A stretch of DNA of 64,000 bases from the sequence record PP777464.1; one strand, 5' to 3'. Position 1 is the stretch's first letter, and each line of letters starts with the position of its first letter. The position numbers were made by a program, and so were the translations under genes. Positions 9,760 to 50,766 of this stretch are shown one piece after another. The notes beneath the pieces were generated by a model that had not been told where the DNA came from, made no database searches, and worked only from the letters and a program-made list of their open reading frames with translations.

Positions 9760-10011
9760 ATGAAAGTACTGACAGAACTAGAAATGTATCATAGATTTAA
9801 TAAGTACTATCATTTACTTAAGCCTATACAGAGAATTAAATGTCCATTTGAAGAGAAACAGGTTTTAATCTATGAGCACAAGTTCTTTGTATCATTAGGT
9901 ACAGATCAACAAGAGTACTATTTGACGTTGTACTTGATTACATTAATAGATTTCATTCACTATAAAACCACACAATCTAAACAAGCTAATAAAGAGAAAT
10001 ATGAAAACTAA
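9760..10011 (+). CDS. F1 paralog 28
   Basis: LGTDQQEYY; start probably 9760 (MKVLTELE), ORF open from 9727. Confidence 0.85.
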   Translation: MKVLTELEMYHRFNKYYHLLKPIQRIKCPFEEKQVLIYEHKFFVSLGTDQQEYYLTLYLITLIDFIHYKTTQSKQANKEKYEN

Positions 10012-10339
10012 TATAAAACTCAAGGTATATAAATCATTTGCAAGTACATACATCAAATGCCATACATGTAACTCTGTAATGGACTACAAAGGTAAGCCAT
10101 TTGCACTTACTTATGATAATACAAGAGGTTTTTATATATCTTTTGCTGATTACAAATATAACATATACGAACACATTGACATTGAAGATTTAAGTACTTT
10201 ATCTGAAGAGGAATACTTTCAAGAATCATTAGTATGGGATTTGGAGTTTCCTATGCCATTAGTACATAAGATGATAGTACTAATAAAAGAAACTAAACCT
10301 GTACCTAATGGTTATGAAGAACACATTATTGAGTATTAA
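10001..10339 (+). CDS. F2 protein (EExxFQxSL family)
   Basis: LSEEEYFQESLVWD. Confidence 0.88.
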   Translation: MKTNIKLKVYKSFASTYIKCHTCNSVMDYKGKPFALTYDNTRGFYISFADYKYNIYEHIDIEDLSTLSEEEYFQESLVWDLEFPMPLVHKMIVLIKETKPVPNGYEEHIIEY

Positions 10340-10353
10340 TATATAAGGTAACT

Positions 10354-10695
10354 ATGAAAACTAATATACAACTCAATGTATACAGTTCAGAAGAACATAC
10401 ATATATCAAATGCAGTCTATGTAAAGATGTAATGGACTACAAGGGTAAGCCATTCACAATTACTTATGATTCTTATGTTAATGATTTATATATATCATTT
10501 CTTAATTACGAAAAGAAAATATACAAGCACGTTGATATTAAAGATTTAAGTACTTTATCTGAAGAAGAATACTTTCAAGAATCATTAGTATGGGATTTAG
10601 AATTTCCTATGCCATTAGTACATAAAATGGTAGTCCTAATGAAAGAAACTAAACCGGAGTTTAATGGTTATGAAGAACACATCGTTGAGTACTAA
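10354..10695 (+). CDS. F2 protein, recent duplicate of 10001
   Basis: LSEEEYFQESLVWD; C-terminal third nearly identical to 10001. Confidence 0.88.
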   Translation: MKTNIQLNVYSSEEHTYIKCSLCKDVMDYKGKPFTITYDSYVNDLYISFLNYEKKIYKHVDIKDLSTLSEEEYFQESLVWDLEFPMPLVHKMVVLMKETKPEFNGYEEHIVEY

Positions 10696-10698
10696 ACA

Positions 10699-10923
10699 AT
10701 GAAAATATTATCATACAAAGATTACCGCAAGCTTCGCGGTATTTTGCGACCAGAAATTCAAAGAATTAATTCTCTTCCTATATCTAATGCAGAATGTTCA
10801 GTACTGAAAGATGAGTTAATATTAAAACACACAGTAGGAACTAACTATCAAGCTGATAGTGTTCGATATCTAATTTGGGGATTAATATGCATAGTAAAGG
10901 AAAAACAAGCTCAAGTACTGTGA
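10699..10923 (+). CDS. F1 paralog (dispersed)
   Basis: VGTNYQADS. Confidence 0.85.
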   Translation: MKILSYKDYRKLRGILRPEIQRINSLPISNAECSVLKDELILKHTVGTNYQADSVRYLIWGLICIVKEKQAQVL

Positions 10924-11249
10924 CAATCGAAGTGAATTCTATTAATGCTGGTAATGCAGTAGATAAGTTCTTTATTGCTCAAGGGTACAGGAAAGATATT
11001 CATCAATATTGTTCAGTATATGGGGAGTACAATAGTACTGAAGATATAATTTATTGGTCAACACATCAAGATTATCTAACTAAAATTGGCATTCCAGATG
11101 TTAGTACTTTATCTGAAGAAGAATACTTTCAGTACAGCTTAGTACATGATTTACCTATACCTTTAGGGTTAATCAAGGGTATACAGGAAGAGGTTCATAA
11201 GCTTAAATCCATGAGTAAAGGTACTTTCATTAGAACAGTGCAATACTAG
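10875..11249 (+). CDS. F2 protein
   Basis: LSEEEYFQYSLVHD; start uncertain. Confidence 0.82.
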   Translation: MGINMHSKGKTSSSTVTIEVNSINAGNAVDKFFIAQGYRKDIHQYCSVYGEYNSTEDIIYWSTHQDYLTKIGIPDVSTLSEEEYFQYSLVHDLPIPLGLIKGIQEEVHKLKSMSKGTFIRTVQY

Positions 11250-11250
11250 C

Positions 11251-11279
11251 TTGACAGTACTTTTCATTACTGATATAGT
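11251..11279 (+). promoter_or_regulatory. sigma70 promoter
   Basis: TTGACA-17-TATAGT with TG extension; AGTACT overlapping -35. Confidence 0.7.
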
Positions 11280-11308
11280 ACCTGTACGTTAATCATGGGG
11301 TAAAAATT

Positions 11309-11554
11309 ATGTTGAATTTTTTAAATTTCCTTATCGTCTTGTGTATTGTTCTTGGGATTGCACCATTTGTATTGTATTTCATGGATTCAGATGAAATGCA
11401 GAAGATGAATTGTACAAGGACAGGACAGAGTAGAGTAGAGACGATTCTTATGCCTGTTACGGTTATTGTTAACAACATGCCCATTACCAACATGGTCCCT
11501 ACCCTAACGACAACGTACCAGTACTCTTGTACAGACGGAGAGAGGTGGAGATAA
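11309..11554 (+). CDS. Small membrane-anchored protein
   Basis: N-terminal hydrophobic helix, Cys pair flanking a beta-hairpin-like segment. Confidence 0.75.
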   Translation: MLNFLNFLIVLCIVLGIAPFVLYFMDSDEMQKMNCTRTGQSRVETILMPVTVIVNNMPITNMVPTLTTTYQYSCTDGERWR

Positions 11555-11877
11555 TGCGTAAGTTCAATTGTATTGTACGTAAGAATTCATGTTACATTGT
11601 AGTAGCTGATTTTAATACAGGTTCTGGATTGAAGATATTTGAGTACAGAAAATGCAATAATTCTTTTCATTGGAAATTGGGTGCAAGAAAAGCAAAAACA
11701 ATTTCAGTACCGAATTTATGTTCTATCTCTGAAGAAGAAGAGTTTCAGTACTTGTTAGTACATGATGATTCTTTAGGATTTACATTAGAAGATATGAAGA
11801 AAGTACAACAGCAGATGATTGCACATTGTCATCTTCCAAAGAATTTTGTTCAACACGTATGTGAATTCCACATATAA
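11527..11877 (+). CDS. F2 protein
   Basis: ISEEEEFQYLLVHD. Confidence 0.85.
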   Translation: MYRRREVEIMRKFNCIVRKNSCYIVVADFNTGSGLKIFEYRKCNNSFHWKLGARKAKTISVPNLCSISEEEEFQYLLVHDDSLGFTLEDMKKVQQQMIAHCHLPKNFVQHVCEFHI

Positions 11878-11886
11878 GAGAAGAAT

Positions 11887-12198
11887 ATGAAATTTAATAT
11901 AGCAAAAACATCGAGTATATGTATTTTTGGTTATGCAGAAGAGTTAGGTGATATTGACATTCTTTTGTACAAAAAGGATGGTGTTATGCATTTCAAGTAC
12001 CAGGATGAAGAGGCAGACAATTATCTTTTACCTAATTTAGTACACATGCAGGAAGAGGAATTATTCCAGTACAGCTTAATATACGACATTGATATTTGCA
12101 CGATGCCAGTATTAATTAGTATTCAAAAAGTGATGCTAGATATGTATGATAAGCTAATACAAGGTATGTCAGGGAGGATCATTGAAATTGACATATAA
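11887..12198 (+). CDS. F2 protein
   Basis: MQEEELFQYSLIYD. Confidence 0.85.
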   Translation: MKFNIAKTSSICIFGYAEELGDIDILLYKKDGVMHFKYQDEEADNYLLPNLVHMQEEELFQYSLIYDIDICTMPVLISIQKVMLDMYDKLIQGMSGRIIEIDI

Positions 12199-13187: not shown

Positions 13188-13748
13188 ATGAATGATATTG
13201 AGTTATTGGTACATAAGATTTGCACAATATCGTTAGTGCTGGACAATGCGAATACAGTACAGAGTTCCCTTTTAAGAATTAATAAAGTTGGGAGTAGTTT
13301 ATATTTGGAAGTAAAAGCTGGTTTTGCAGGACAGTACAATGATAAAATCAAAGAAGAAGTTAAGGGAAATGAAGATGCTTTCATTGAGGTTTGTGCAACA
13401 GTTGGTTCAAATCCAATTTCAGTATCACCTTTAATGCGAAATGAAAATTCAGAATTTGATTCCAGTTTTGAAGGTTATTTGTGGTACAATTATGGTGATG
13501 ATTATTTTATATATCAGAATTCCAAAACGGATTATAGTGAAGAAGGTATAAAATTCATTGATCCTTACAATGAAGCAGAAGTATTTCAGACATCCCTAAT
13601 ATACAATACAAATCAAATGAAGTATCTTATGTTGTTTAGTACAATGCATTTGAATCCATTGAAAGATAATTTAAAATTTTTCATTCGTTTAGAATTAGTT
13701 GATATTGCTTATGATCTTTTAATGCAAGGATATAGTTATGAAGTATAA
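13188..13748 (+). CDS. F2 protein
   Basis: NEAEVFQTSLIYN; ends YDLLMQGYSYEV. Confidence 0.85.
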   Translation: MNDIELLVHKICTISLVLDNANTVQSSLLRINKVGSSLYLEVKAGFAGQYNDKIKEEVKGNEDAFIEVCATVGSNPISVSPLMRNENSEFDSSFEGYLWYNYGDDYFIYQNSKTDYSEEGIKFIDPYNEAEVFQTSLIYNTNQMKYLMLFSTMHLNPLKDNLKFFIRLELVDIAYDLLMQGYSYEV

Positions 13749-13818
13749 AATGCTTTATACAAAAGATATGATTTATGTTGAATTAGAAGACAATGACGAT
13801 GTATCCATCAATAGGTAA
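13738..13818 (+). pseudogene. Truncated copy of the 14321/14653-type F2 gene (26 codons)
   Basis: MKYKMLYTKDMIYVELEDNDDVSINR* matches the N-terminus MKYKMLYTL..IYVELE; 36-bp junction identical at 13719 and 14302. Confidence 0.75.
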
Positions 13819-13824
13819 TAATAT

Positions 13825-14331
13825 ATGAATGAGATAGAATTATTAGCACACAAGATTAGTACAGTAATGCTTATGCTCAAGAATAATCATTCTATGCATA
13901 AGTACATTTTTATAGGTGATTTACGCATAGAAGATAGATATGATAAATTATCGTTTATGTTTAAAGATGAAAGTAATGCAAAAGTTTGTTTTGCAGCATT
14001 TGCCCAAGGCAATCCAGAACAAGCATCTCCTGTTATATATGAAAATAGTGAAGGGTATTTGTGGGTCAACACAAACGATTATTTCTTTTATGTTTTGAAA
14101 CAAGATGATGAAGTAGAAGCACGAATTGATTTAATTGATATTAGTACAGATTGTAGTGCTGAATTATTTCAGAAATCGTTATTATACAGTCCTCGTCAAA
14201 TACATTATCTAAAGTTATTCAGTTCATTGTACGCGAATCCTTTAATTAAGGGTTTTAAATTTTATATCAAAATTCCGCACCTTTCAAACGTTTATGATTT
14301 ATTAATGCAAGGATATAGTTATGAAGTATAA
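13825..14331 (+). CDS. F2 protein, paralog of 13188
   Basis: CSAELFQKSLLYS; same C-terminus YDLLMQGYSYEV. Confidence 0.85.
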   Translation: MNEIELLAHKISTVMLMLKNNHSMHKYIFIGDLRIEDRYDKLSFMFKDESNAKVCFAAFAQGNPEQASPVIYENSEGYLWVNTNDYFFYVLKQDDEVEARIDLIDISTDCSAELFQKSLLYSPRQIHYLKLFSSLYANPLIKGFKFYIKIPHLSNVYDLLMQGYSYEV

Positions 14332-14632
14332 AATGCTGTATACATTAACATTAATATATGTAGAATTAGAATCCGATTCAGATGCATGGAATTTGGTTAA
14401 AGAGGTCGATACCAATCAATGGTACATGGCAAATTTAGACGCACATGTTGTTACGGATTATTTTATAGATTTTAATACATTATCTGAAGAAGAATTTTTC
14501 CAAATGCAATTGGTGGTTGACATGTACGGACATGACATGGTAACATTAAGAAATATACAGAAAGTCGTTAATGAATTCCAAAGCAAGAAAGATTATGAAG
14601 TAGGAGCGTATTATGACATCGACGTACAGTGA
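14321..14632 (+). CDS. F2 protein
   Basis: LSEEEFFQMQLVVD. Confidence 0.85.
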   Translation: MKYKMLYTLTLIYVELESDSDAWNLVKEVDTNQWYMANLDAHVVTDYFIDFNTLSEEEFFQMQLVVDMYGHDMVTLRNIQKVVNEFQSKKDYEVGAYYDIDVQ

Positions 14633-14979
14633 AAGCAATGAGTACAATAGTTATGAAGTATAAAATGCTTTATACATTATCAGGGATATATGTAGAATTA
14701 GAACCCGATTATCCAGATGGATGGAATTTTATTAAACGCTCCGAAAGAAATACATGGCACATGGCACATTTGGATAATGACGTAATATTAGACAATTTTG
14801 TGGATTTTAATACATTATCAGAAGAAGAATTCTTCCAAATGCAATGTGTGCTTGACACAAAAGGATTTGATGTGCTATTATTAAGGAATATACAGAAAGC
14901 TGTTAACGAATTAATATCCAATGACGAGTTAGGCAAAGTGAGGCTGTTCCATGATCTCGAAGTACCGTACCAGCAATGA
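14629..14979 (+). CDS. F2 protein, paralog of 14321
   Basis: LSEEEFFQMQCVLD; likely start ATG 14653. Confidence 0.85.
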   Translation: MKAMSTIVMKYKMLYTLSGIYVELEPDYPDGWNFIKRSERNTWHMAHLDNDVILDNFVDFNTLSEEEFFQMQCVLDTKGFDVLLLRNIQKAVNELISNDELGKVRLFHDLEVPYQQ

Positions 14980-15520
14980 AATTCAGTACACCTACGCTAA
15001 TGCAATCCTAATGGGACAAAAGTTAGCTTGTATTGTTGCAGCCTTATATAATGTACAGAAAGCAGCACATAATAAAAAACCATATACAAGAATCATTAAC
15101 GCATTCATGGGGTTTAAACCATCTGATTTTGATTCACATATTGCGTGCACAAGTTATTTTGACAAACGATTCAATACACCTGATACCCCAAATGCCCGTA
15201 GTGTTATTAGTCTTTTACAGTTTAATCCAACACCAGTTATATCAAAGAATGATTTGGATTACACATGGTACAATTCAAATCAAGATTCATTTTATTCTAA
15301 TGATCAATCGATTGAATATAATAAAATTAAATCAGAGGAAGCATTTTTTCAGGAATCATTATTTACACATGAACGTTCTTTGTTTTATAGTGTTATGTTG
15401 AGTACAGTATACAATAGTCCATTACACAAGAATAACAAAATTAATTTCAGTTTTTGTGCTTATGCGATTGATGGTGTTTATGAGTGCTTAATGGAGGTAT
15501 TGAGTTATGAAGCTGAATAA
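14951..15520 (+). CDS. F2 protein
   Basis: KSEEAFFQESLFTH. Confidence 0.83.
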   Translation: MISKYRTSNEIQYTYANAILMGQKLACIVAALYNVQKAAHNKKPYTRIINAFMGFKPSDFDSHIACTSYFDKRFNTPDTPNARSVISLLQFNPTPVISKNDLDYTWYNSNQDSFYSNDQSIEYNKIKSEEAFFQESLFTHERSLFYSVMLSTVYNSPLHKNNKINFSFCAYAIDGVYECLMEVLSYEAE

Positions 15521-15848
15521 TACATTTGATATTAATAAGTTAAGAGAATGGTTTAATAATATTGAAATTGACGCCATTCCTTATCATACATATGAACAAA
15601 GCGATTTACAAAGTATTGATATCAGAGAGTTGTACAAATATTATCAGAGTGCATTAGAGATGCATAAGTTATTTTTGAGTACAAATTTCATCCTAAATTA
15701 CAATTTTGAGGAATTTAATAATTATAATTTAGTACAGAAATATGTAGTAGCAAAGTACATGTACAATCAAGGTATAAAAGGTTGCATCGAATTCAATACC
15801 GTTCTTATTTTAGTTGAGGTAATTTTATGCACCGCATGTCTGATTTAG
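15507..15848 (+). CDS. Hypothetical protein
   Basis: 113 aa, GGAGG SD. Confidence 0.75.
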   Translation: MKLNNTFDINKLREWFNNIEIDAIPYHTYEQSDLQSIDIRELYKYYQSALEMHKLFLSTNFILNYNFEEFNNYNLVQKYVVAKYMYNQGIKGCIEFNTVLILVEVILCTACLI

Positions 15849-16324
15849 AGTTCAGTTTAGATGCAGCCTTTAAATTTGTTCACAAAATAGAAACAATATA
15901 TCGTACATTATGTGCAATAACATCAGTATCAAAAGAGTTTGATGTTGGTGAAAGGTATCAGGTGTGGAATAATTCATTTTATAATAAAGAACATTCTGCG
16001 ACGGCATTTTATATTTTAGCATTTAATCCCAGCAATTGTTACCCAGAGAAGCATGAACGTTATCCAAATGACGACATGTGGTTTGAGTACAAAGAAGATG
16101 CTGATATGTCGTCAATTGTAGTTCCTGATGATTTTAATGCACAAGATTTAACAGAAGAGTGGTGGTTCCAGCAGAATTTAGTACATGATGATATTGATTT
16201 ATTTTTCTATATTGCATTTAAAATGCTTTATCACAACAATATAGTTAAAGAAAGTTTATCGTTTTCATGTCTATATATTGATGATTTGTACAATGAAATT
16301 CAAATAAACATGCCTGTATCGTAA
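15827..16324 (+). CDS. F2 protein
   Basis: LTEEWWFQQNLVHD. Confidence 0.85.
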   Translation: MHRMSDLEFSLDAAFKFVHKIETIYRTLCAITSVSKEFDVGERYQVWNNSFYNKEHSATAFYILAFNPSNCYPEKHERYPNDDMWFEYKEDADMSSIVVPDDFNAQDLTEEWWFQQNLVHDDIDLFFYIAFKMLYHNNIVKESLSFSCLYIDDLYNEIQINMPVS

Positions 16325-16340
16325 GATATGGGCTTTTTTT
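16312..16340 (+). terminator. Intrinsic terminator
   Basis: GCCTGTATC-gtaa-GATATGGGC + T7. Confidence 0.75.
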
Positions 16341-16342
16341 GT

Positions 16343-16371
16343 TTGACACAAGTACAAATGCATGGTACAAT
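16343..16371 (+). promoter_or_regulatory. sigma70 promoter
   Basis: TTGACA-17-TACAAT with TG extension. Confidence 0.75.
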
Positions 16372-16398
16372 GTGTAATCATTTTTTAAGGAGATACCT

Positions 16399-16947
16399 AT
16401 GGAAAATTTTAAAATACCAGATGATTTCAATTCAGTACAAGAGATGGTACACAAGGTTCATTATATTTTTCATGAATTAATTATTGCCAATTCATCCGGT
16501 ATGCAAATTGAGTTAAAGGATATTGATAGAGAAGAAGTATTTCTGGCTTCCCCAAATTCAATCATTCCTTTTTATGGACAAGATCGTTTATGGTTCATGA
16601 GAGATACCCCAATTGACAAATACAAAATACAAACAAAATCAGAGTTTTATTCTATTTTTGAATATCTTAATATTACATTACAAACACAAGATATAAATGC
16701 AATAAGTGCCATGAGTGCTGAGGAATATTTTCAGTACAGTACATTGCATAGTCCAGAAGAAATCTTTGTTGTTATGCTCGTTGCAAAATTGAGTACAGTT
16801 GATTTTGGGACGTACCCAAATAAATCATTCAAGATTATTATTCCTGCATTCGTCGATCTTTATGATTTCATTGTGCACAAGAAAGAAAGTACAGTGTACG
16901 ATATGTATCGTTCAAATATCAGTATGATTACAGGGGAATTAAAATGA
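16399..16947 (+). CDS. F2 protein
   Basis: MSAEEYFQYSTLHS; AAGGAG SD. Confidence 0.85.
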   Translation: MENFKIPDDFNSVQEMVHKVHYIFHELIIANSSGMQIELKDIDREEVFLASPNSIIPFYGQDRLWFMRDTPIDKYKIQTKSEFYSIFEYLNITLQTQDINAISAMSAEEYFQYSTLHSPEEIFVVMLVAKLSTVDFGTYPNKSFKIIIPAFVDLYDFIVHKKESTVYDMYRSNISMITGELK

Positions 16948-17552
16948 ACATAGATCAATTAATGAAGTACAGTACAAGTGTAATTCCAGTGCTAAGTAAA
17001 GCATTAGATGCATTCAATGCTAAGTACCCTGAAGGTTCAGAGTTAAATATTCCTTTTACCACAGAAGGGATTGTTGATACGTACATTGTAAACATCAGTA
17101 GTACAGGTATTGTTTTGAAGCAAAAGTACGGCGAAAGTGAATATTATGGATTGAAGCTGGATAATATTTCAGGAGAGAAGACACCTTATGAGTTTTGGGT
17201 TCCGAATAACATTGAGTCATGGAAAACAAATATTAATAAGAGAGACGAAAGAAATTTACCTCTTGTACAAAATAATGAAAAAAGAATTGACGTATTTTAT
17301 TATTACAGTACAGCCCAGTTTCCAGAAGAGATTTATTTAAATTCAGAGGTTCATGAAGATATTGAATCATTTTTCTTTCAGTTATCATTGGTACAGGATA
17401 TCATGCCTGTGCAAATGTTCAGGGATGAAATAAATTTAGCGAAAGAGATTTCGGATATGTTACCTGAATTTAGTGTTCTTTATGGTAGTAGAGCTTTACC
17501 TGAAAATGTTTACAAAGAATTTATTTCCATTGTTAAAGGGTTGAATATATAA
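16944..17552 (+). CDS. F2 protein
   Basis: DIESFFFQLSLVQD. Confidence 0.83.
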   Translation: MNIDQLMKYSTSVIPVLSKALDAFNAKYPEGSELNIPFTTEGIVDTYIVNISSTGIVLKQKYGESEYYGLKLDNISGEKTPYEFWVPNNIESWKTNINKRDERNLPLVQNNEKRIDVFYYYSTAQFPEEIYLNSEVHEDIESFFFQLSLVQDIMPVQMFRDEINLAKEISDMLPEFSVLYGSRALPENVYKEFISIVKGLNI

Positions 17553-17553
17553 T

Positions 17554-17748
17554 ATGACCGCCTATGATATCAAACAAAGGCATACGAAGTTTGATTTGTT
17601 CACATACCAATTCCACAATGATATAGTGAATTTTAACATCAATGCGTCCTTGCATCCTACATCACAAGATGATTTTGACAACAGAGTGCTTAACATCGTG
17701 GTGCTTTTGTGTTATAATCATTTCAGTGAATATTTTAACACAAGATAA
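17554..17748 (+). CDS. Small hypothetical protein
   Basis: 64 aa, abuts upstream stop. Confidence 0.6.
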   Translation: MTAYDIKQRHTKFDLFTYQFHNDIVNFNINASLHPTSQDDFDNRVLNIVVLLCYNHFSEYFNTR

Positions 17749-17761
17749 GGTTGAGGCACAC

Positions 17762-18280
17762 ATGTATCAGGCCAAGTACAATACATCATATGCATTTGCA
17801 CACAACATTTTGAAGATCATCAAAGCGTTAGAGGGTGGATTGCTTAGTCATAAGTACACCAGAGTAGGTGACAATTGGTTCAGAAATGATGATGAGTTCA
17901 GAAGTCATAAGATTGTTTACAGCAATAATTACAGTGCCAATTACCTTCAGGATGTTGCTATGTGCTTCGAATACGTGTTACAGTTCAGGGGTTCCATCAG
18001 TCCTGATCTAAGAGAACACATGTACATTCGATACCTACCAATGCTTAAGGATGAGAAAACAATATTCAATTCAGTACACCACAGAGTACGAGAGAGATCA
18101 TTCAGGGATATTTTAGAAGATGAAGCTGCCTATTTTCAGCAATCATTGATTGATGCTCCTGATGTGTTACAGATGCAGAATTTGTATAATGTATTAGATG
18201 CGAACATCGATACGGATATCTTTTTTTCCTTAAGTGATTATGAAACATTTTTGGAAGATTTAAAGGAAATAGGATTATGA
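17762..18280 (+). CDS. F2 protein
   Basis: EDEAAYFQQSLIDA; start moved to 17762 (GAGG SD). Confidence 0.83.
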   Translation: MYQAKYNTSYAFAHNILKIIKALEGGLLSHKYTRVGDNWFRNDDEFRSHKIVYSNNYSANYLQDVAMCFEYVLQFRGSISPDLREHMYIRYLPMLKDEKTIFNSVHHRVRERSFRDILEDEAAYFQQSLIDAPDVLQMQNLYNVLDANIDTDIFFSLSDYETFLEDLKEIGL

Positions 18281-18621
18281 GTAGATTTTCAGTTTATATA
18301 GTAAACGTCAGTAAAGATGGTAGTTTAATTGAATTTGATGTAGTTGATAACAATGATAATTCATATGGTATTAAGGTACAGGACAATGATGTACAGTTCA
18401 GTACAAGGACAAATTTTGAGAATCCAGTCCAAGTTCCGAATTTCATAGAAGATGAAGCTGCACGATTCCAACACGAAACGGCCTTTGATAATTTAGCGAT
18501 GCATATTATTATGCAACAAAGTTTAGTTCAATTGCTTCAGGTATTCAGACAAAATATATATGTACATGAAGTGTCGATTAATGGCATTCAAAGTTCCGTT
18601 TTGTTCGGTACAAATATGTAA
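18277..18621 (+). CDS. F2 protein
   Basis: EDEAARFQHETAFD. Confidence 0.8.
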   Translation: MSRFSVYIVNVSKDGSLIEFDVVDNNDNSYGIKVQDNDVQFSTRTNFENPVQVPNFIEDEAARFQHETAFDNLAMHIIMQQSLVQLLQVFRQNIYVHEVSINGIQSSVLFGTNM

Positions 18622-18631
18622 GGAAAGTACA

Positions 18632-19186
18632 ATGAGTTCAATGAGTTTATTAGATACATTAGAAAAAGACAGAAGTGCCATTAAGAGATTAAAAAATCTT
18701 GTCCAGAGCATTGCGAACAACGCTGAGAAGTTCAGTGACAATCTTAGTATAGGTGATATAACCAGTACAGGAATAAAATCCCTGAAGTCAGATTTATTAA
18801 TTCATAAGGAAGATAAATTATTATTTGTATTGAGTTCAGATTTAATGGTTGCAAGTAATGGTTTCAATTCGATATCAACACAAGATGGTAGCACAGGATT
18901 ATATCTATCACAGGGTGTCCAGACGAACGAACAAAAGTGTTTTAGTTCAGGAGTACAGAATCCCTTTAAGTTCAGTACAGAACAAGCTACAGAGCTTTTA
19001 GATGCTTCAGAAGAGATGTTATTTCAGTACAAAACGGTTCATACAGATTTTGAATTACGATGCATGTACGCTGTTAAGCATTATGTTCAGGAGTTCGAGA
19101 ATTTAAGTTATCTTTTAGTTCGAACGAATACAAAGAACATTGGTGCATTAGAAGATTACATTTCAAAAGTTGTTAAAGGGTGCTAA
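18632..19186 (+). CDS. F2 protein
   Basis: ASEEMLFQYKTVHT; start moved to 18632 (AAGGA SD). Confidence 0.83.
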   Translation: MSSMSLLDTLEKDRSAIKRLKNLVQSIANNAEKFSDNLSIGDITSTGIKSLKSDLLIHKEDKLLFVLSSDLMVASNGFNSISTQDGSTGLYLSQGVQTNEQKCFSSGVQNPFKFSTEQATELLDASEEMLFQYKTVHTDFELRCMYAVKHYVQEFENLSYLLVRTNTKNIGALEDYISKVVKGC

Positions 19187-19816: not shown

Positions 19817-19866
19817 NNNNNNNNNNNNNNNNNNNNNNNNNNNNNNNNNNNNNNNNNNNNNNNNNN
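19817..19866. other. Assembly gap (50 N)
   Basis: Run of N; true length unknown. Confidence 0.99.
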
Positions 19867-19915: not shown

Positions 19916-20329
19916 TTGGAGTTTACCTTATTAATTACAGTAGAGATTATTATGGAAATAAAATATAAAGAATTTTGTATAGGGACATGGATGTACACGG
20001 GTGAGTTGATTACGTGTTGTAATTTGTACAAAGGTGATTTAAACTACACAAGGGGCAAGGTTATAAAGTTCTGGAATTCACAATTTTATTTAATGGATCT
20101 TGGTACTGGATTTAGTTGTAAAGCAACCGATATGCTGGACTATACCTTAATGGATGATGCTGCACTATTTCAGGAGTCATTAGTATTTGACAAGAAGTAC
20201 ATCTGTACATTAGAAGAGATTGTTGAAATCCAGCGTAGAATTAAATGCATTCACAGGGAATGTATAGATAAATGGTGTAAAACTGGTGAAACTAATTTTA
20301 GTAATCATTTCAATCTAGGGGAAGAGTGA
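19916..20329 (+). CDS. F2 protein, FDKKY subgroup
   Basis: MDDAALFQESLVFDKKY; CNLxKGD. Confidence 0.85.
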   Translation: MEFTLLITVEIIMEIKYKEFCIGTWMYTGELITCCNLYKGDLNYTRGKVIKFWNSQFYLMDLGTGFSCKATDMLDYTLMDDAALFQESLVFDKKYICTLEEIVEIQRRIKCIHRECIDKWCKTGETNFSNHFNLGEE

Positions 20330-20685
20330 TGGAATTTGATTTTTTAATATCAGTACATTCTTTTAAGAACAGTTTTCAGTACTTTTGTAATTTAAACAAA
20401 GGTGATTTGATGCACAGTGCAAATGAGTATATTCATTTTACGGATGGTAAATTCACATTCATTGATTACAATTCATTACAGTATCCACATCAGGATATGC
20501 CGGATTATACAGTAATGGATGCCGCTGAACTATTTCAGGAGTCATTAGTATTTGATAAGAAGTACTTGTGTACATTTGAAGAAGTTATTGCAATACAAAA
20601 TGAAATGAAAGAGTATGACTCTTTGAATAAAGGCAATGTCAGTATTAATCAAGAATACAAATTCAATATAGGAATACCAGAATGA
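20326..20685 (+). CDS. F2 protein, FDKKY subgroup
   Basis: MDAAELFQESLVFDKKY. Confidence 0.87.
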   Translation: MMEFDFLISVHSFKNSFQYFCNLNKGDLMHSANEYIHFTDGKFTFIDYNSLQYPHQDMPDYTVMDAAELFQESLVFDKKYLCTFEEVIAIQNEMKEYDSLNKGNVSINQEYKFNIGIPE

Positions 20686-21047
20686 CATATGATTATTCAA
20701 TGTACGTTTGTAAGTCCAGAACGGGGTGGGATTTGTGCTGTAATCTTGTCAAGGGTGATTCGGAACATGAGTTGAGTTTATATATTCAGTACTCGGATTT
20801 GTGTTTTAATTTCATTGATGTATTACATGATGACTTCGACTATAACTCTGAAAGTATTACAGATTATACAGTACTGGATGATGTTGAACTATTTCAAGCT
20901 TCTTTGGTGTTTGACAAGAATAAGTACTCATGTACAATAGAAGATATGATTTTTATACAAAATGAAATGAAGAGATATGTTAAAGAAAACACCTTTGATA
21001 CATCTACACCAACAACAAGTAATTATTATTTCAATACAGGTGAGTAA
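20682..21047 (+). CDS. F2 protein, FDKKY subgroup
   Basis: LDDVELFQASLVFDKNKY. Confidence 0.87.
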   Translation: MTYDYSMYVCKSRTGWDLCCNLVKGDSEHELSLYIQYSDLCFNFIDVLHDDFDYNSESITDYTVLDDVELFQASLVFDKNKYSCTIEDMIFIQNEMKRYVKENTFDTSTPTTSNYYFNTGE

Positions 21048-21048
21048 T

Positions 21049-21393
21049 ATGGAATATGATTTTTCTATGTTTATACCTAAGATTAGTACTTCACTGGAAG
21101 TGTATTGCAATCTTAACAAAGGTGATTATGAACACAAAATGGATCAGTACATTAAATTTAATGGTTCTTACTTTAGCTTCATTGATTATCAGGCCAAAGG
21201 AACAGTTGTAGAAAATATGAAAGACTATACAACTGTACAGGGTGAGGCTGAAATATTTCAAGAGTCATTAATATTTGACAAGAAGTACTTGTGTACACTA
21301 GAGGAAGTTATTGAACTCCAACAGAAGATGAAAGAATATAGAAGAATCTGTATAGAGACTGATTCCAAAGATAGGTATCGTTTTAAGCTATGA
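21049..21393 (+). CDS. F2 protein, FDKKY subgroup
   Basis: GEAEIFQESLIFDKKY; start moved to MEYDFS 21049. Confidence 0.87.
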   Translation: MEYDFSMFIPKISTSLEVYCNLNKGDYEHKMDQYIKFNGSYFSFIDYQAKGTVVENMKDYTTVQGEAEIFQESLIFDKKYLCTLEEVIELQQKMKEYRRICIETDSKDRYRFKL

Positions 21394-21576: not shown

Positions 21577-22047
21577 ATGAGTTTTGCAAGAGCATTAGAA
21601 ATTGCTAAGTTAATTGATTTATGTAAAAAGGAAATAGTACTCAATCAACTCAATGGGTATCTATTCAAGGAAGGTAAAGCTTATTGTCGAATGATATACG
21701 ATGACAGTAGTGAGTACATTCACATGTACGAAGAAAACTTAGATTCTTCTGAAACAACACTCACTGGGTGTGATGTTAATCTGGAAGATAATTACATGTA
21801 CTTCTGTCGTGATGCTGATATTTTAATACAATATACTGACATTATAACTGGTGCAGCAGAGAAACATCTTCCGTATTCAGTACTGGATAATGACTGGGGA
21901 AGTGAAGAGTTCTACTTCCAGCAGAATACTATCTACGAGGAATATGTGCTTGACAAGCTTGTCATTCTGTGGTACTTTAATAATACAGATTGTCCTAGCT
22001 TCTATTTGGACTTGGATCTACTACGAGTTATTAAAGAGGATATATGA
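21577..22047 (+). CDS. F2 protein, MSLxSAL subgroup
   Basis: WGSEEFYFQQNTIYE ... FYLDLD. Confidence 0.87.
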   Translation: MSFARALEIAKLIDLCKKEIVLNQLNGYLFKEGKAYCRMIYDDSSEYIHMYEENLDSSETTLTGCDVNLEDNYMYFCRDADILIQYTDIITGAAEKHLPYSVLDNDWGSEEFYFQQNTIYEEYVLDKLVILWYFNNTDCPSFYLDLDLLRVIKEDI

Positions 22048-22484
22048 GTTTAGCAAGTGCACTTAAACTGGCACACAAAATACATCACTTCCACGATAAC
22101 ATAAAAAGTGGTTTCTATGGTGATAAAGTAAGTGCATTTGGTAATGAGTATTATCTATCAGGTATAAAGACATACTCTGATGATATTTTACTTATGGGCC
22201 ATGATAAAGACAATACTATACAGTACTCTTCATGTAGTCAATATACTAGTTTTTTTGTATATATTCCAGGTACTAAGATTACTTTTGACACATCAAATAC
22301 ACCTGTTGACTTCGGGGTACTTGATGGGCCGTGGGGTACTGAAGAGTATTACTTCCAACAGAGTCTTATTTTTAACCAAGAAATGCTTGATTCCTTGGTT
22401 GTTTTGTGGTACTTTAAGGAATTGAATTTTGAACCCTTCTTCCTTGACTGGGGAGCATGTGAATATTTAAGTACAGGGGATTAG
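22044..22484 (+). CDS. F2 protein, MSLxSAL subgroup
   Basis: GPWGTEEYYFQQSLIFN. Confidence 0.87.
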   Translation: MSLASALKLAHKIHHFHDNIKSGFYGDKVSAFGNEYYLSGIKTYSDDILLMGHDKDNTIQYSSCSQYTSFFVYIPGTKITFDTSNTPVDFGVLDGPWGTEEYYFQQSLIFNQEMLDSLVVLWYFKELNFEPFFLDWGACEYLSTGD

Positions 22485-22486
22485 TA

Positions 22487-27318: not shown

Positions 27319-27325
27319 GGTTAGT

Positions 27326-27885: not shown

Positions 27886-27918
27886 CTCTTTATATTAATT
27901 GTAAAGGGTTATATCACT

Positions 27919-35001: not shown

Positions 35002-35012
35002 CGGAGAACTAC

Positions 35013-38145: not shown

Positions 38146-38506
38146 ACTAATCGCGGCGATGGGAGCCAATGAGAAATACTTCAATGGGATTCATTTTTTT
38201 AAAACGGATCTTAGTGAAAGTAAAGTACTATATGTGTATGGCTCCCAGTACTGCATTGTTACAAAGCACCCCGATGCGATTTCACTAAAATTTAATACTT
38301 ATTCAAAAAACTTCTTGACGATTAATAAAAGCAATGTTACTATGTCTGGTATAGGGAATCAGGTTGTTGAGATTCCTTTGGACTCAATTGATTCTATTGA
38401 GTTCTTTCAATACGAGTGCTTAGGTGTTGATTTTGGTACTGTCAGTACTGAATCTATGCGATCATTAATTAATTTACTTAAAGGTAAAGTTCATGCTTTT
38501 AACTAA
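38093..38506 (+). CDS. F2 protein
   Basis: IDSIEFFQYECLGV; start uncertain. Confidence 0.78.
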   Translation: MLFNSLTKNETRLTTTDELIAAMGANEKYFNGIHFFKTDLSESKVLYVYGSQYCIVTKHPDAISLKFNTYSKNFLTINKSNVTMSGIGNQVVEIPLDSIDSIEFFQYECLGVDFGTVSTESMRSLINLLKGKVHAFN

Positions 38507-38993
38507 TTCGATGAAGTATTCATTTAAAATTATCAAAGAAATACTAAATGGATCTAAAAATCATAGTGGGTCTTCCTTTACTAGTGACCAGATCCAACAC
38601 AGTACAAAGGATTGTACTGTAATCTTTGGGTTACATAGTCTGCGTTTGACAATAGTAAATAATATTGATAACACAGCAATTGTAATCACCCCATGTCATA
38701 TTCAGAATGATACTGGTGTATACTTACACCACATGGGGACTGTATTCTACATCTTCAATACTGAAGAAAACATTGTTAAAGAATACAACACACTCAATGT
38801 TGATGCTGGTGAGTTATTTCAATTGAGTACTGTCAATGATTGTAACTTCAGTGACAATGCAGAAGTACTTCCATTGTTTCTAAGTCTTCTCAATAACATG
38901 GAAAAACTAACCATTGCATACAACAAAAGTGACGTACCGCAAGCAGTATTGAATATCACCGAAGCAATGGAGAAATACAAAGCTGTGACCTAA
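38493..38993 (+). CDS. F2 protein
   Basis: VDAGELFQLSTVND. Confidence 0.83.
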   Translation: MLLTNSMKYSFKIIKEILNGSKNHSGSSFTSDQIQHSTKDCTVIFGLHSLRLTIVNNIDNTAIVITPCHIQNDTGVYLHHMGTVFYIFNTEENIVKEYNTLNVDAGELFQLSTVNDCNFSDNAEVLPLFLSLLNNMEKLTIAYNKSDVPQAVLNITEAMEKYKAVT

Positions 38994-48650: not shown

Positions 48651-48668
48651 CTCAAGTAGTGATATAAT
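48641..48668 (+). promoter_or_regulatory. Possible promoter
   Basis: GGGACA-16-TATAAT with TG extension. Confidence 0.5.
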
Positions 48669-48708
48669 ATTGGATGAGGAACAATAACTAACACAAGGAG
48701 TGTGTAAA

Positions 48709-49437
48709 GTGCTTGACCGTATCCGTTTCGCTACAGAGATGGCGAATGAATTAAACATGGCAAATTTTCAAATGTTAACATCAGTGATGGCTGAACATGC
48801 ATGTGCTTATTCTGTAAGTGGTGTGCAGTGCGGTCAGGAGAATATGTTAGCAGATGTATATAGCGAAGTTCAAAGTAAACAATACAGTGTAAAGACGTAC
48901 AAGGATAAGTTCGTTAGTCTTTATATGAATGAAGACATTGCAGAAGACCGCAAATATACTGATTTTATTATTGAACGAAGAGTATCAGGTGTATCCAACC
49001 CAAATGCTGACAGTACTACAGTATTTGCAGAAGTACTTCAAGATATATATGAAAATGAATTGAAAAGTAAGAATCATTACAATGTACGTGAAACTAACAC
49101 AGTGCTCTTGGGATATGATGAAGACGATCAATATTATTATTTCCGTATGACTGAAGTTCCTTTTGAATATAAATCACCAAGTACTACTGCTGTAAAAGAA
49201 TTTACCGAGAAAAGCAAGAACTACAAGAAACATGAAGGCAACCGTTGTAGTATAAATGGTTATAATGAAGATGGTGTTCATATATATGAATGGGTTCATC
49301 CTAATTGCCAGACATATACCCGTTGCTTGAAGAAACGTTATAATTTAGAAGACAATGAATCCTTCTACTTTAAAGTTAAGAAACAAGGCTATACTCGCCC
49401 TGAAGATTCAGAATTGATGGGTATGGTATATTTCTAA
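48709..49437 (+). CDS. Hypothetical protein
   Basis: GTG 48709, 8 nt after AAGGAG; ~242 aa. Confidence 0.8.
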   Translation: MLDRIRFATEMANELNMANFQMLTSVMAEHACAYSVSGVQCGQENMLADVYSEVQSKQYSVKTYKDKFVSLYMNEDIAEDRKYTDFIIERRVSGVSNPNADSTTVFAEVLQDIYENELKSKNHYNVRETNTVLLGYDEDDQYYYFRMTEVPFEYKSPSTTAVKEFTEKSKNYKKHEGNRCSINGYNEDGVHIYEWVHPNCQTYTRCLKKRYNLEDNESFYFKVKKQGYTRPEDSELMGMVYF

Positions 49438-49446
49438 GGAACTGTT

Positions 49447-49728
49447 ATGGATTTTTACCTACACACATGGTCATACGAACAATACATTACATTATATCTT
49501 GAGATTATTAATACTGATCCCAGATATGGTTGTGATTTTGCTGATATTATAAAAGAGTATGCAGATGAGTTTGAGTTTGTATATCTTGGCTCTGACCTAT
49601 TCGTGAAGAGTGTAGGTAAAACCGGACGCATCACTGAGATTGATTATGATACTGTTAGTGTGAATTTCTATGTTGATTTTCCTTGTGATGGCGTTGATGG
49701 TGTATATTGTCTATATGAAATAATTTAA
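49447..49728 (+). CDS. F3 small protein
   Basis: YLGSDLFV..GKTGRITEIDY. Confidence 0.78.
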   Translation: MDFYLHTWSYEQYITLYLEIINTDPRYGCDFADIIKEYADEFEFVYLGSDLFVKSVGKTGRITEIDYDTVSVNFYVDFPCDGVDGVYCLYEII

Positions 49729-49734
49729 ATTTTT

Positions 49735-49759
49735 AGGCCAGCGTTTGCTGGTCTTTTTT
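49735..49759 (+). terminator. Intrinsic terminator
   Basis: AGGCCAGC-gttt-GCTGGTCT + T5. Confidence 0.8.
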
Positions 49760-49772
49760 CGCAGGTACAAAG

Positions 49773-50072
49773 ATGATTAGTATAGATTTAATTAACAGTA
49801 CTATAAAGTTGTTGGCTGATGTAGTGAGAGAATCCAATGGAACTGTATACCCATCAATGTATAAAATCTTTGAACGATACATCAAGGATTGTAACATATC
49901 CTTATATGGACTGGCGGTTGATATAGACGACCACTATGAAATTAATACTTCATATAAAACAGGAATGTTAATTGGTATTAATATGATGGGATATTTTCCT
50001 TATTACTGTATAGGATTACCAGATAGTACTATGGTAGATTATCCAGCCAGTACTATTAAACTAAGAGGATAG
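49773..50072 (+). CDS. F3-like small protein
   Basis: LYGLAVDI ... KTGMLIGI. Confidence 0.72.
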   Translation: MISIDLINSTIKLLADVVRESNGTVYPSMYKIFERYIKDCNISLYGLAVDIDDHYEINTSYKTGMLIGINMMGYFPYYCIGLPDSTMVDYPASTIKLRG

Positions 50073-50076
50073 AATT

Positions 50077-50766
50077 TTGATTAAAGATTTAGATAGAATT
50101 TTATATGTACTGAGGGGTGTAATTACATTACAACCACAGGTTAATCGTATGGAGAGAGCCTTTGAATTAAAATCAAGAGAAACTCCATATTCACATATAT
50201 CAAATGTAGTTGGTTCATTCAGTACTGAAGACTCCCCTTATGATATTTGTGTATGTGAAGTACAGCCAAGTTCGGATCTTGGGTTTGCTATTTTTGATAA
50301 AAATCAAAATCTAATTAGTATGTTTCAGTGCAATAATCCTTTTTGGAAAACATGCCTGTATCCAGAGTGGGCTATGCTTGATCCAACCAAGAGTTCCATT
50401 AAAGTATATGACTCTAAAAATGATGAAGTCGTTATTGATTTGGATGAGTCAATGTCAGAGGAAGAACACTTTCAGCTAATGATGATGCGTGCTATGCCTG
50501 AATACAATGCAATGATTAACACTGTGCAATACATTAAGGATACCATGCCATCGTTGCGTACACATGAGTTTTGTCATCCGGTATTGTATGAACATTTGGA
50601 TTTAGATTTCAGTACTATTAAATTTAAAGATAATGTTATTAATTACATTCAAGAGAATGTTAAATTTGATTTTATTAGTACAATGACAAATAATCCAAAT
50701 ACTAATTTCAGGCATCAGTACAATGAATCTTTGTCTGGTGGTCGTGATACAACTTGGTGGAAATAA
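50077..50766 (+). CDS. F2 protein (outlier position)
   Basis: MSEEEHFQLMMMR; TTG start with GAGG SD. Confidence 0.82.
   Translation: MIKDLDRILYVLRGVITLQPQVNRMERAFELKSRETPYSHISNVVGSFSTEDSPYDICVCEVQPSSDLGFAIFDKNQNLISMFQCNNPFWKTCLYPEWAMLDPTKSSIKVYDSKNDEVVIDLDESMSEEEHFQLMMMRAMPEYNAMINTVQYIKDTMPSLRTHEFCHPVLYEHLDLDFSTIKFKDNVINYIQENVKFDFISTMTNNPNTNFRHQYNESLSGGRDTTWWK

What the first reader, a model, noticed from the sequence alone, without database searches (positions are those of the whole stretch)
10001..50766. About 50 dissimilar proteins (F2) share a short EExxFQxS[LT] motif: a possible modular adaptor system
Seen: about 50 ORFs of 100-280 aa carry [ST]-x-E-E-x-[YLF]-F-Q-x-[SN]-[LT]-[VIL]-x-[DN], usually 30-70 aa from the C-terminus and followed by a helix; about 7 more have degenerate versions. 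The N-terminal two-thirds are often unalignable. They fill most of 10-39 kb. Inference: a fixed motif on many different bodies resembles an adaptor library (compare poxvirus ankyrin/F-box proteins), in which a variable domain selects a target and the motif docks on one shared hub. Candidate hubs are a protease (the window encodes ClpP), a virion-loading or ejection apparatus, or host RNA polymerase. I do not know this family as described.
Basis: partly seen in the sequence, partly recalled or inferred. Interest (0 to 1): 0.88.

Follow-up and report, generated by a model that had tools for sequence, protein, structure and literature searches.

The report
Expanded FQ-motif protein family, jumbo phage
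About fifty neighbouring genes of an E. coli jumbo phage (fEgEco12, a RaK2-like phage) are fast-diverging copies of one small uncharacterised protein with no recognisable fold, all keeping an almost invariant EExxFQxS helix; the function is unknown and the "adaptor library" idea is neither shown nor excluded.

Summary
The window is 100% identical to Escherichia phage fEgEco12 (375 kb, Asteriusvirus-like).

- **Family size:** an iterated profile finds 44 + strand ORFs (103-229 aa), 43 in 10001-38993 and one at 50077-50766. F and Q are invariant in all 44. Five weaker ORFs keep FQ and three more are degenerate.
- **Beyond the window:** at least 15 further members lie at 275-297 kb of the same genome, so about 10% of its genes belong. 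RaK2 has about 30, GAP32 and CBB a few. Only 142 clusters exist among 1.84 billion proteins.
- **Annotation:** no Pfam or NCBIfam match. The family is split over 31 PHROGs, all of unknown function.
- **Structure:** a confident AlphaFold2 model (pLDDT 89.5, pTM 0.85) shows one compact alpha+beta domain. The motif is a short helix plus linker at pLDDT about 96. Nothing similar was found in the PDB (best Z 2.9) or the ESM Atlas.
- **What it is not:** the motif is not a disordered docking peptide, and at least 14 members are homologous end to end. In about 15 members only the motif segment is detectably shared.
- **Conservation:** the motif's polar residues are more conserved than any core position outside the motif, which suggests a shared functional site.
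- **Expression context:** phAPEC6 counterparts were not found in virions. Strong sigma70-like promoters suggest early expression.

No partner was identified.

The parts
10001..12198 (+). Five short-type members (103-124 aa): 10001-10339, 10354-10695, 10875-11249, 11527-11877, 11887-12198
   Evidence: Motif-region profile E 3e-16 to 3e-15. FQ lies 39-43 aa from the C-end. 10001 and 10354 are 73% identical tandem copies.
13188..16947 (+). Seven members: 13188-13748, 13825-14331, 14321-14632, 14629-14979, 14951-15520, 15827-16324, 16399-16947
   Evidence: Profile E 1e-17 to 3e-14. 13825 and 15827 align end to end with the core subfamily profile that excludes them, probability 94%.
16944..19186 (+). 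Members 17642-18280 and 18560-19186; weak members 16944-17552 and 18277-18621, which keep FQ
   Evidence: Strong members. Weak members: profile E 0.0026 and about 0.02, with the motif visible in the alignments.
19817..19866 (.). Assembly gap or mask of 50 N. It is intergenic and not part of any member.
   Evidence: The coordinate offset to PP777464.1 is the same on both sides. The gap lies between annotated g110 and g111. The letters were not read.
19916..21393 (+). Four short-type tandem members: 19916-20329 (annotated start 19952), 20326-20685, 20682-21047, 20977-21393
   Evidence: Profile E 2e-18 to 3e-16. Their N-terminal parts are mutually related. They match phrog_15629 and phrog_13866.
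21577..25123 (+). Core subfamily and neighbours: 21577-22047, 22044-22484, 22487-22978, 22953-23396 (model 2), 23393-23707, 23707-24150, 24147-24593; weak member 24590-25123
   Evidence: Profile hits. Six of them belong to the 51-member full-length cluster. The model of 22953-23396 has pLDDT 89.5 and pTM 0.85. 24590-25123 matches the full-length profile at E 2.7e-5.
25436..26032 (+). Member 25436-26032 (198 aa)
   Evidence: Profile E 2.7e-14. It matches phrog_32681.
26631..30111 (+). Eight members: 26631-26990, 26980-27318, 27269-27859, 27919-28398 (model 1), 28395-28877, 28870-29232, 29216-29629, 29617-30111
   Evidence: Profile E 3e-17 to 1e-11. 27919 and 29617 align end to end with the core profile, probability 98-99%. 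Model 1 has pLDDT 68.8.
30634..31702 (+). Members 30634-31191 and 31118-31702
   Evidence: Profile hits. 30634 aligns end to end, probability 92%. 31118 aligns only over the motif and the following helices.
31790..36737 (+). Members 32924-33502, 33927-34433, 34420-35001, 35013-35564, 36153-36737; weak or degenerate 31790-32353 (FQ replaced by FN), 32353-32937, 33502-33930, 35525-36163 (F replaced by M)
   Evidence: For these members only the motif-centred segment is detectably similar to the core subfamily.
37160..38993 (+). Members 37160-37678 and 38493-38993; weak member 38093-38506
   Evidence: Profile E 5e-10 and 3e-9. The weak member has E 0.0056 and keeps FQ.
50077..50766 (+). Outlying member (229 aa), with FQ 97 aa from the C-end
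   Evidence: Profile E 6e-12. It matches phrog_32531.
11251..11279 (+). Sigma70-like promoter candidate in an intergenic gap. Similar candidates: 16343-16371, 17599-17627, 27856-27885, 31734-31762, 40846-40873.
   Evidence: 10-12 of 12 consensus matches. Sites with 11 or more matches: 19 on the + strand against 1 on the - strand across 1-60000.
16312..16333 (+). Terminator-like hairpin just upstream of promoter candidate 16343. A second pair lies at 31701-31720 and 31734.

Best explanation
This is a lineage-specific, tandemly amplified family of small, non-virion proteins of RaK2-like jumbo phages. I call it the FQ-domain family here.

- **Fold.** In the members that can be judged, each protein is one compact alpha+beta domain. 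The order of elements is an N-terminal helix, a seven-strand beta meander, and then a helical C-terminal part.
- **Motif.** [ST]-E-E-x-[YLF]-F-Q-x-S-[LT]-[VIL]-[YHW]-D is the short third helix plus the tight linker into the fourth helix. It is an integral keystone of the domain, not an appended docking peptide.
- **Shared site (inferred).** The motif's polar residues are more conserved than any hydrophobic core position outside the motif. It therefore most likely also forms a shared functional site, for the same ligand, partner or activity, on every paralogue.
- **Evolution.** The rest of the surface diverges quickly through duplication, loss and substitution.
- **Role (inferred).** The genes sit in operon-like arrays behind strong sigma70-like promoters, next to T4-type counter-defence genes (RNA ligase 1 and polynucleotide kinase). 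The most likely role is an early-expressed repertoire of host-interaction (take-over or anti-defence) proteins.

**Shown:** the family, its size and distribution, protein-level selection, tandem birth and death, the folded context of the motif, and absence from the virion proteome of a relative.

**Inferred:** early timing, the shared functional site, and the host-directed role.
For: - **Identity.** The window is 100% identical to fEgEco12.
- **Family in the window.** 44 strong members, plus weaker ones.
- **Elsewhere in the genome.** Further hits outside the window, including at least 15 ORFs at 275-297 kb.
- **Other phages.** phAPEC6 48 hits, RaK2 29-30, GAP32 5-6, CBB 2-4. Only 142 true clusters in 1.84e9 proteins, all 65-229 aa, with no fusions seen.
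- **Fold.** Model 2 has pLDDT 89.5 and pTM 0.85, with the motif at H100-106 plus linker 107-111. Model 1 matches independent BFVD models of SP27, RaK2 and other family members over nearly its whole length; for the listed SP27 and RaK2 models TM is 0.53-0.59 at 14-20% identity.
- **End-to-end homology.**
- **Tandem duplication.** The best paralogue is the immediate neighbour in 16 of 33 cases. Copies differ between fEgEco12 and phAPEC6, and family orthologues are 74% identical against 86% for neighbouring genes.
- **Polar motif conservation.**. The motif is retained in a distant contig.
- **Protein-level selection.**
- **Not in virions.**
- **Promoters.**
- **CBB homologues.** They lie inside the region its authors suspect to be early, PMC5259590.
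- **Context genes.**
Against: - No expression data were obtained. The one raw-read RNA run gave no reads, and the metatranscriptome contigs cannot show transcription.
- No function, partner or ligand is known.
- For about 15 members, mainly at 31-39 kb, only 20-60 residues around the motif are detectably homologous. A common fold for all members is therefore not shown.
- Short-type members (103-138 aa) lack the N-terminal helix and the first strands.
- Each conserved polar residue could in principle be a helix-capping residue, which would make the motif purely structural.
Confidence: 0.5

Rival explanations
1. Adaptor library. The invariant motif surface docks every paralogue on one hub of the host or the phage, such as a protease, RNA polymerase or another conserved machine. 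The divergent remainder of each protein selects a different target.
For: - Polar motif residues are more conserved than any core position outside the motif.
- The motif is near-identical in distant phages although the rest is unrecognisable.
- N-terminal parts of many members are not alignable.
- The phage encodes its own ClpP at 63274-63969.
Against: - The motif lies in a confidently folded helix plus linker of a single domain, not in a flexible tail.
- Many members are homologous end to end.
- Orthologue divergence is not concentrated in one module.
- No hub has been identified.
- The virion-loading variant is disfavoured by the mass-spectrometry data.
Confidence: 0.2
2. Purely structural keystone. 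The motif only stabilises the fold through helix caps and one buried Phe. The paralogues share no partner or activity and have unrelated, possibly dispensable, functions.
For: - S/T followed by E-E at a helix start, and D before the next helix, are classical capping positions (general knowledge, applied to the secondary structure).
- The region has very high pLDDT.
- The motif is always at a similar distance from the C-end.
Against: - Q at 98% and S at 83% conservation exceed what the fold's own hydrophobic core positions show.
- Capping residues are usually exchangeable.
Confidence: 0.15
3. Small enzymes. D...E-E...Q-x-S...D forms a catalytic or metal-binding site, and the paralogues act on different substrates.
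For: There is a cluster of conserved acidic and polar residues: D 64%, E 80%, E 77%, Q 98%, S 83%, D 42%.
Against: - No similarity to any enzyme fold or family.
- 60-70 paralogous enzymes of 100-200 aa in one phage would be without precedent known to me.
Confidence: 0.07
4. Processing or degradation signal. [YLF]-F-Q resembles the sites of 3C/TEV-type proteases (my own knowledge). Alternatively it could act as an internal degron, so that a protease cuts or destroys all members.
For: Resemblance to the pattern E-x-x-Y-x-Q only. The phage encodes ClpP.
Against: - The residue after Q is variable, while the next four positions are conserved.
- The site lies in a folded helix.
- No 3C-like protease was seen among the window ORFs that I scanned.
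Confidence: 0.04
5. Packaged internal or inner-body proteins that carry a targeting signal, as in T4 internal proteins.
For: phAPEC6 has an inner body (PMC7247149). A conserved short signal on diverse proteins is the T4 precedent (my own knowledge).
Against: - None of the syntenic phAPEC6 gene products gp404c-gp466c is among the 62 virion proteins.
- The motif is internal and folded.
Confidence: 0.03

Closest known systems
PHROG families 9317, 12674, 13866, 15629, 19795 and 26 others (all 'unknown function')
   Same: These are the same proteins. 44 window members hit 31 PHROGs, with cross-hits between them.
   Different: PHROGs does not unite them, and no name, motif, structure or function is attached. 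The RaK2 paper only remarks that about 10% of its gene products are paralogues (PMC3622015).
Poxvirus ankyrin / PRANC (F-box-like) proteins
   Same: It is a multi-copy family in a large DNA virus, with a conserved C-proximal element and a divergent remainder.
   Different: - PRANC is a separate C-terminal domain that binds Skp1, and the ankyrin part is a repeat array.
- Here there is one compact domain, no Pfam match to PRANC, F-box or ankyrin, no known hub, and the host has no SCF ligase.
Lineage-specific expansions in giant viruses and jumbo phages (for example about 35 zinc-ribbon paralogues in Bacillus phage G, PMC7824862; ASFV multigene families, from my own knowledge)
   Same: It shows tandem arrays of small paralogues, copy-number turnover between close relatives and fast divergence, and it is presumed to be host-directed.
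   Different: The fold is unrelated. Here a single short motif is kept nearly invariant, and the family reaches about 10% of all genes.
T4 internal proteins with an N-terminal capsid-targeting sequence (my own knowledge)
   Same: A short conserved peptide is shared by otherwise dissimilar phage proteins.
   Different: The T4 signal is N-terminal, cleaved and leads to packaging. Here the motif is internal and folded, and relatives are absent from virions.
Tandem arrays of polymorphic-toxin immunity proteins (SUKH / SMI1-KNR4 type; my own knowledge)
   Same: They are arrays of many small alpha+beta paralogues that diverge quickly.
   Different: There is no sequence or structural match to those families. 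Those arrays lack one invariant motif.

Membership tests
FQ-domain family (as defined here; equals a set of PHROGs of unknown function) | Significant match to the profile of the ~85-aa motif region, with F-Q at the motif position | tested here: met
   44 ORFs at E<1e-9 with F and Q invariant. 0 hits in shuffled or minus-strand controls.
FQ-domain family | One shared fold over the whole protein | tested here: inconclusive
   - Met for at least 14 window members, and supported by near-full-length matches to BFVD models.
- Only the motif segment is detectable in about 15 others.
- Short-type members lack the N-terminal elements.
Short linear docking motif on unrelated proteins | The motif lies in a disordered or flexible region | tested here: not met
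   It is a helix at 100-106 plus linker, at pLDDT about 96, inside a domain with pTM 0.85.
Short linear docking motif on unrelated proteins | The carrier proteins are not homologous to each other | tested here: not met
   There is a 51-member full-length cluster, and leave-out profile alignments run end to end. This stays unresolved for some members.
Poxvirus-type ankyrin/PRANC or F-box adaptors | Match to PRANC, F-box or ankyrin profiles | tested here: not met
   No such Pfam hit in any of the 44 members.
T4-type packaged internal proteins | Presence in the virion | tested here: not met
   phAPEC6 gp404c-gp466c are absent from Table 1 of PMC7247149. This is a relative's data, not fEgEco12's own.
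Any solved or Atlas-predicted fold | Structural match above background | tested here: not met
   With the confident model: best Foldseek E 0.52, best Z 2.9 against 48,161 PDB chains, best Atlas TM 0.35.
Early (host RNA polymerase-transcribed) phage genes | Transcription early in infection | not testable with these tools
   Only promoter-like sites and an author's suggestion for phage CBB. The RNA runs gave no usable signal.
Adaptors of a Clp protease | Binding to ClpP, ClpX or ClpA | not tested

The most novel reading that the evidence does not exclude
The 60-70 FQ-domain paralogues form a binder repertoire. All engage one conserved host or phage hub through the invariant acidic EExxFQxS helix-linker. 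Their fast-evolving beta-sheet faces capture different host targets. This would be a bacteriophage counterpart of the poxvirus ankyrin/PRANC adaptors, built on a fold not seen before.
Probability: 0.2. Interest if true: 0.85.

Novelty: new member of a known kind. Interest (0 to 1): 0.6.

Why it matters
About a tenth of the genes of a 375-kb phage, and tens of genes in related Klebsiella, Salmonella and Cronobacter jumbo phages, belong to one family. It has no name, no Pfam model and no recognisable fold, and databases split it into 31 unrelated-looking groups.

Uniting these groups gives a single handle on the largest block of 'dark matter' in RaK2-like phages: one profile and one motif to mutate. 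The combination of copy-number turnover, fast divergence and one nearly frozen polar motif is the signature expected of proteins in direct conflict with the host. The family is therefore a good place to look for new take-over or anti-defence mechanisms, and it offers a candidate new protein fold for experimental structure work.

Tried and rejected
- **DNA-level explanation** (a conserved promoter, recombination site or RNA element inside the genes): rejected. Synonymous codons vary freely and Ser uses both codon families.
- **Pfam, NCBIfam and a PDB sequence-profile search:** no meaningful hit.
- **Fold searches with the first, mediocre model:** nothing outside the family.
- **Fold searches with the confident model:** nothing.
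- **ESM Atlas feature search:** no usable hit.
- **Homodimer prediction of 22953-23396:** no answer, score 0.00, and the partner's own fold was uncertain without an alignment. This is no evidence either way.
- **RNA evidence:** the only raw-read RNA run gave zero reads on 26500-32400. Short contigs in wastewater metatranscriptomes and one cDNA-labelled library cannot prove transcription.
- **P0046 (773 aa, 13 stretches) from the big search:** a tandem-repeat false positive.
- **The two 282-aa ORFs (39677-40525, 41702-42550):** not related to each other or demonstrably to the family.
- **Acidity as a sign of DNA mimicry:** median pI is 4.9, but neighbouring non-family ORFs are similar at 5.3. 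It is not distinctive.
- **Resemblance of Q-x-S-L-[VI] to beta-clamp-binding peptides, and of [YL]-F-Q to 3C/TEV protease sites:** both come from memory, sit in a folded context and were not tested.

Full report
**Source and context**

Window 21000-31000 is 100.0% identical to Escherichia phage fEgEco12 (PP777464.1, 374,733 bp). It is 86-99% identical to other Asteriusvirus-type jumbo coliphages such as PBECO4, 121Q, SP27 and phAPEC6. Window coordinates equal record coordinates minus 17269. All genes of the region lie on the + strand, are tightly packed, and are annotated as hypothetical proteins. G+C is about 31-33% in 10-40 kb. Downstream lie T4-type RNA ligase 1 (51028-52170), polynucleotide kinase/phosphatase (52993-53925), two metallophosphoesterases, an ATP-dependent DNA ligase, and a phage ClpP (63274-63969).

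**The assembly gap**

The 50 N at 19817-19866 are the only unread letters. ORFs on both sides have the same offset to the deposited record, so the N run has the record's length. It falls between annotated g110 (window 19540-19755) and g111 (19952-20329). No annotated CDS and no family member crosses it. I did not read or fill those letters. The 88-aa minus-strand ORF listed across it is an artefact of reading through N.

Yes.
- Simple patterns find the title motif in 17 ORFs, FQxS[LT] in 35, and FQ plus two hydrophobic positions in 46.
- The looser 'core' pattern gives 18 hits, all on the + strand and none on the - strand.
- A profile built from the ~85-residue region and iterated to convergence finds 44 ORFs at E<1e-9. 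It finds none in five shuffles of all 171 ORFs and none in 103 minus-strand open frames.
- F and Q are invariant in all 44. FQ lies 39-71 residues from the C-end, and 97 in the outlier at 50077-50766.
- Five further ORFs keep FQ at weaker scores, and three look like degenerate members.
- The 43 strong members cover 68% of 10001-38993, or 82% with the weak ones.
- The conserved Ser is encoded by AGY 19 times and by TCN 14 times, and F and Q use both of their codons. Selection therefore acts on the protein, not on a DNA or RNA element.

**Size and distribution of the family**

- Searching the whole fEgEco12 record with the family profile gives 57 matches. 13 of them lie outside the window, mostly at 275-332 kb.
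- Reading 274-298 kb directly shows at least 15 ORFs with the same motif, there 28-45 residues from the C-end. Roughly 60-70 of the 670 annotated genes belong.
- The same profiles find 48 matches in phAPEC6, 29-30 in Klebsiella phage RaK2, 5-6 in Cronobacter phage GAP32 and 2-4 in Pectobacterium phage CBB. Sensitivity falls with distance, so these are lower bounds.
- An exhaustive profile search of 1.84 billion representative proteins returns only 143 hits, one of them a tandem-repeat false positive. All the others are 65-229 aa, so no fusions to other domains were seen.
- The most distant hits come from about 350-kb Salmonella phages (Munch, SE_PL) and from metagenomic contigs.
- One such contig has at least 11 tandem members. 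Their motifs read almost exactly like those of the window, although the proteins show no BLAST similarity to it.

**What is known about it**

Nothing specific.
- There is no Pfam or NCBIfam family and no PDB sequence relative.
- The 44 members are scattered over 31 PHROGs, all of unknown function.
- The fEgEco12 paper does not mention paralogues or motifs.
- The RaK2 paper notes only that nearly 10% of its gene products are paralogues. The CBB paper lists 22 paralogous ORFs.
- A comparative survey of 224 jumbo phages describes other expansions, for example about 35 zinc ribbons in phage G. My term search of that survey did not turn up this family.

**One family or a motif on unrelated bodies?**

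Pairwise, the segments N-terminal to the motif region are mostly unalignable. There are 14 related pairs among 40 segments, in five small groups. Several lines of evidence nevertheless point to shared descent over more than the motif:
- A cluster of 51 sequences, including nine window members, is linked by BLASTP matches (E below 1e-8) covering at least 70% of the longer protein.
- PHROG cross-hits run over nearly the full length.
- N-terminal-only profile comparison recovers the N-terminal helix between subfamilies, with probability 82-86% against below 1% for reversed controls.
- Single sequences compared with the core-subfamily profile that excludes them align end to end at 92-99% probability for 13825, 15827, 27919, 29617 and 30634. 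They align through the last strands plus motif for about six more.

For about 15 members, mainly at 31-39 kb, only 20-60 residues around the motif are detectable, even with small orthologue profiles. Short-type members (103-138 aa) lack the N-terminal helix and first strands.

**Structure**

Its N-terminal helix and its motif region were confident.
- That model matched independent BFVD models of uncharacterised SP27, RaK2 and other family proteins over nearly its whole length. For the listed SP27 and RaK2 models, TM by query is 0.53-0.59 at 14-20% identity. It matched nothing else.
- The second model (22953-23396, 119-sequence alignment) is confident, with mean pLDDT 89.5 and pTM 0.85. Its elements are helix 3-21, seven strands between 28 and 88, a short helix 90-94, helix 100-106, a five-residue linker, helix 112-126, strand 132-135 and helix 137-146.
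- The motif E100-E101-x-x-F104-Q105-x-S107 is the third helix and the start of the linker. Block means of pLDDT there are 95-97.
- With this model Foldseek finds nothing in the PDB (best E 0.52). The exhaustive aligner gives a best Z of 2.9 against 48,161 chains. The ESM Atlas gives TM of at most 0.35. The tool notes that such models typically reach Z 7-8 by chance, so this fold is unusually isolated. That does not prove it is new.

**What the conservation says**

Over 186 sequences the information content is:

| Position | Bits |
|---|---|
| F | 4.3 |
| Q | 4.2 |
| S | 3.2 |
| first E / second E | 3.2 / 3.1 |
| [LT] | 2.9 |
| [VIL] | 2.5 |
| Any hydrophobic core position outside the motif | at most 2.4 |

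. Polar residues that outlast the core usually mark a functional site. Against this, S/T-E-E at a helix start and D before the next helix are classical capping positions, so a purely structural reading is not excluded. I could not compute burial, because the coordinates are not exposed.

**Evolution**

- The closest paralogue is the immediate neighbour in 16 of 33 cases and lies within two genes in 21.
- Between fEgEco12 and phAPEC6, 37 members have reciprocal best hits with a median 74% identity. The figure is 86% for 59 neighbouring non-family ORFs.
- Six members within the compared stretch have no reciprocal best hit there, among them one copy of each of three duplicated pairs. A seventh, 50077-50766, lies outside that stretch.
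- Divergence between orthologues is spread out: N part 71%, pre-motif 70%, motif 82%, C part 78%. There is no sharply hypervariable module.

**Expression and location**

- The syntenic phAPEC6 genes are gp404c-gp466c. None is among the 62 virion proteins found by mass spectrometry, whose list has nothing between gp347 and gp549.
- Promoter-like sites are not more numerous than in shuffles overall. However, the near-consensus ones (11-12 of 12) are 19 on the + strand against 1 on the - strand.
- Several of them occupy the few intergenic gaps (11251, 16343, 27856, 31734, 40846, plus 17599 at 10 of 12). Two follow terminator-like hairpins.
- The CBB homologues (CBB_454, 468, 469) lie in the block that the CBB authors suspect to be early.
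- Direct RNA evidence could not be obtained.

**Interpretation**

- **Best supported:** a lineage-specific multigene family of small non-virion proteins, probably expressed early. It is built, at least in its core members, on one compact and apparently unprecedented alpha+beta domain. The keystone helix-linker of that domain carries a conserved polar site.
The motif is not a portable peptide and the bodies are not unrelated. A common partner or ligand for the conserved site remains plausible and untested. I put it at about 0.2.
- **Tests that failed or were not made.** The homodimer test gave no verdict. ClpP, RNA polymerase and other hubs were not tested.

Noticed in passing
window 3822-10011, plus 10699-10923, 12227-12478 and 25297-25488: This is a second tandem paralogue family: about 30 very small + strand ORFs (60-94 aa), linked by BLASTP at E<1e-3. 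The three I scanned match phrog_4148 (unknown function). It lies directly upstream of the FQ family.
   Followed up: partly
record PP777464.1 275.5-297 kb (locus L006), outside the window: A second cluster of at least 15 FQ-family ORFs (119-180 aa) has the motif only 28-45 aa from the C-end. It is interspersed with a DNA methyltransferase. Further weak hits lie at 106, 120, 311, 317 and 332 kb.
   Followed up: partly
window 51028-53925: A T4-type RNA ligase 1 and a polynucleotide kinase/phosphatase sit side by side, separated only by two small ORFs. This is the classical tRNA-repair pair that counters the PrrC anticodon nuclease. The phAPEC6 paper makes the same suggestion.
   Followed up: no
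window 63274-63969: The phage encodes its own ClpP (Pfam CLP_protease, E 1e-41). No unfoldase partner was looked for.
   Followed up: no
window 1-60000: Near-consensus sigma70-like promoter sites (11-12 of 12 matches) show a strong strand bias: 19 on the + strand against 1 on the - strand. Several lie exactly in the rare intergenic gaps, and two sit just after terminator-like hairpins (16312 with 16343, and 31701 with 31734).
   Followed up: partly
locus L007 (Logan ERR13998736 contig, 50 kb), 7940-17860: A metagenomic phage contig carries at least 11 tandem family members. Their motifs are nearly identical to the window's, although the proteins have no BLAST similarity to it. There are no Pfam hits on any neighbouring gene.
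   Followed up: partly
window 46067-47470: A small third paralogue group consists of four ORFs of 89-103 aa: 46067, 46590, 46912 and 47186.
   Followed up: no
window 39677-40525 and 41702-42550: Two ORFs of exactly 282 aa lie 1.2 kb apart. They are not similar to each other (BLASTP E 4.3) and belong to different PHROGs. Each has an isolated FQ, but membership of the family could not be shown.
   Followed up: partly
window 43795-44849: The fEgEco12 record labels g162 'type I restriction-modification system methyltransferase subunit' and g163 'ribonucleotide reductase A'. The phAPEC6 record calls the syntenic genes Dam methyltransferase and cytidyltransferase. The fEgEco12 labels look doubtful for proteins of 174-177 aa.
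   Followed up: no
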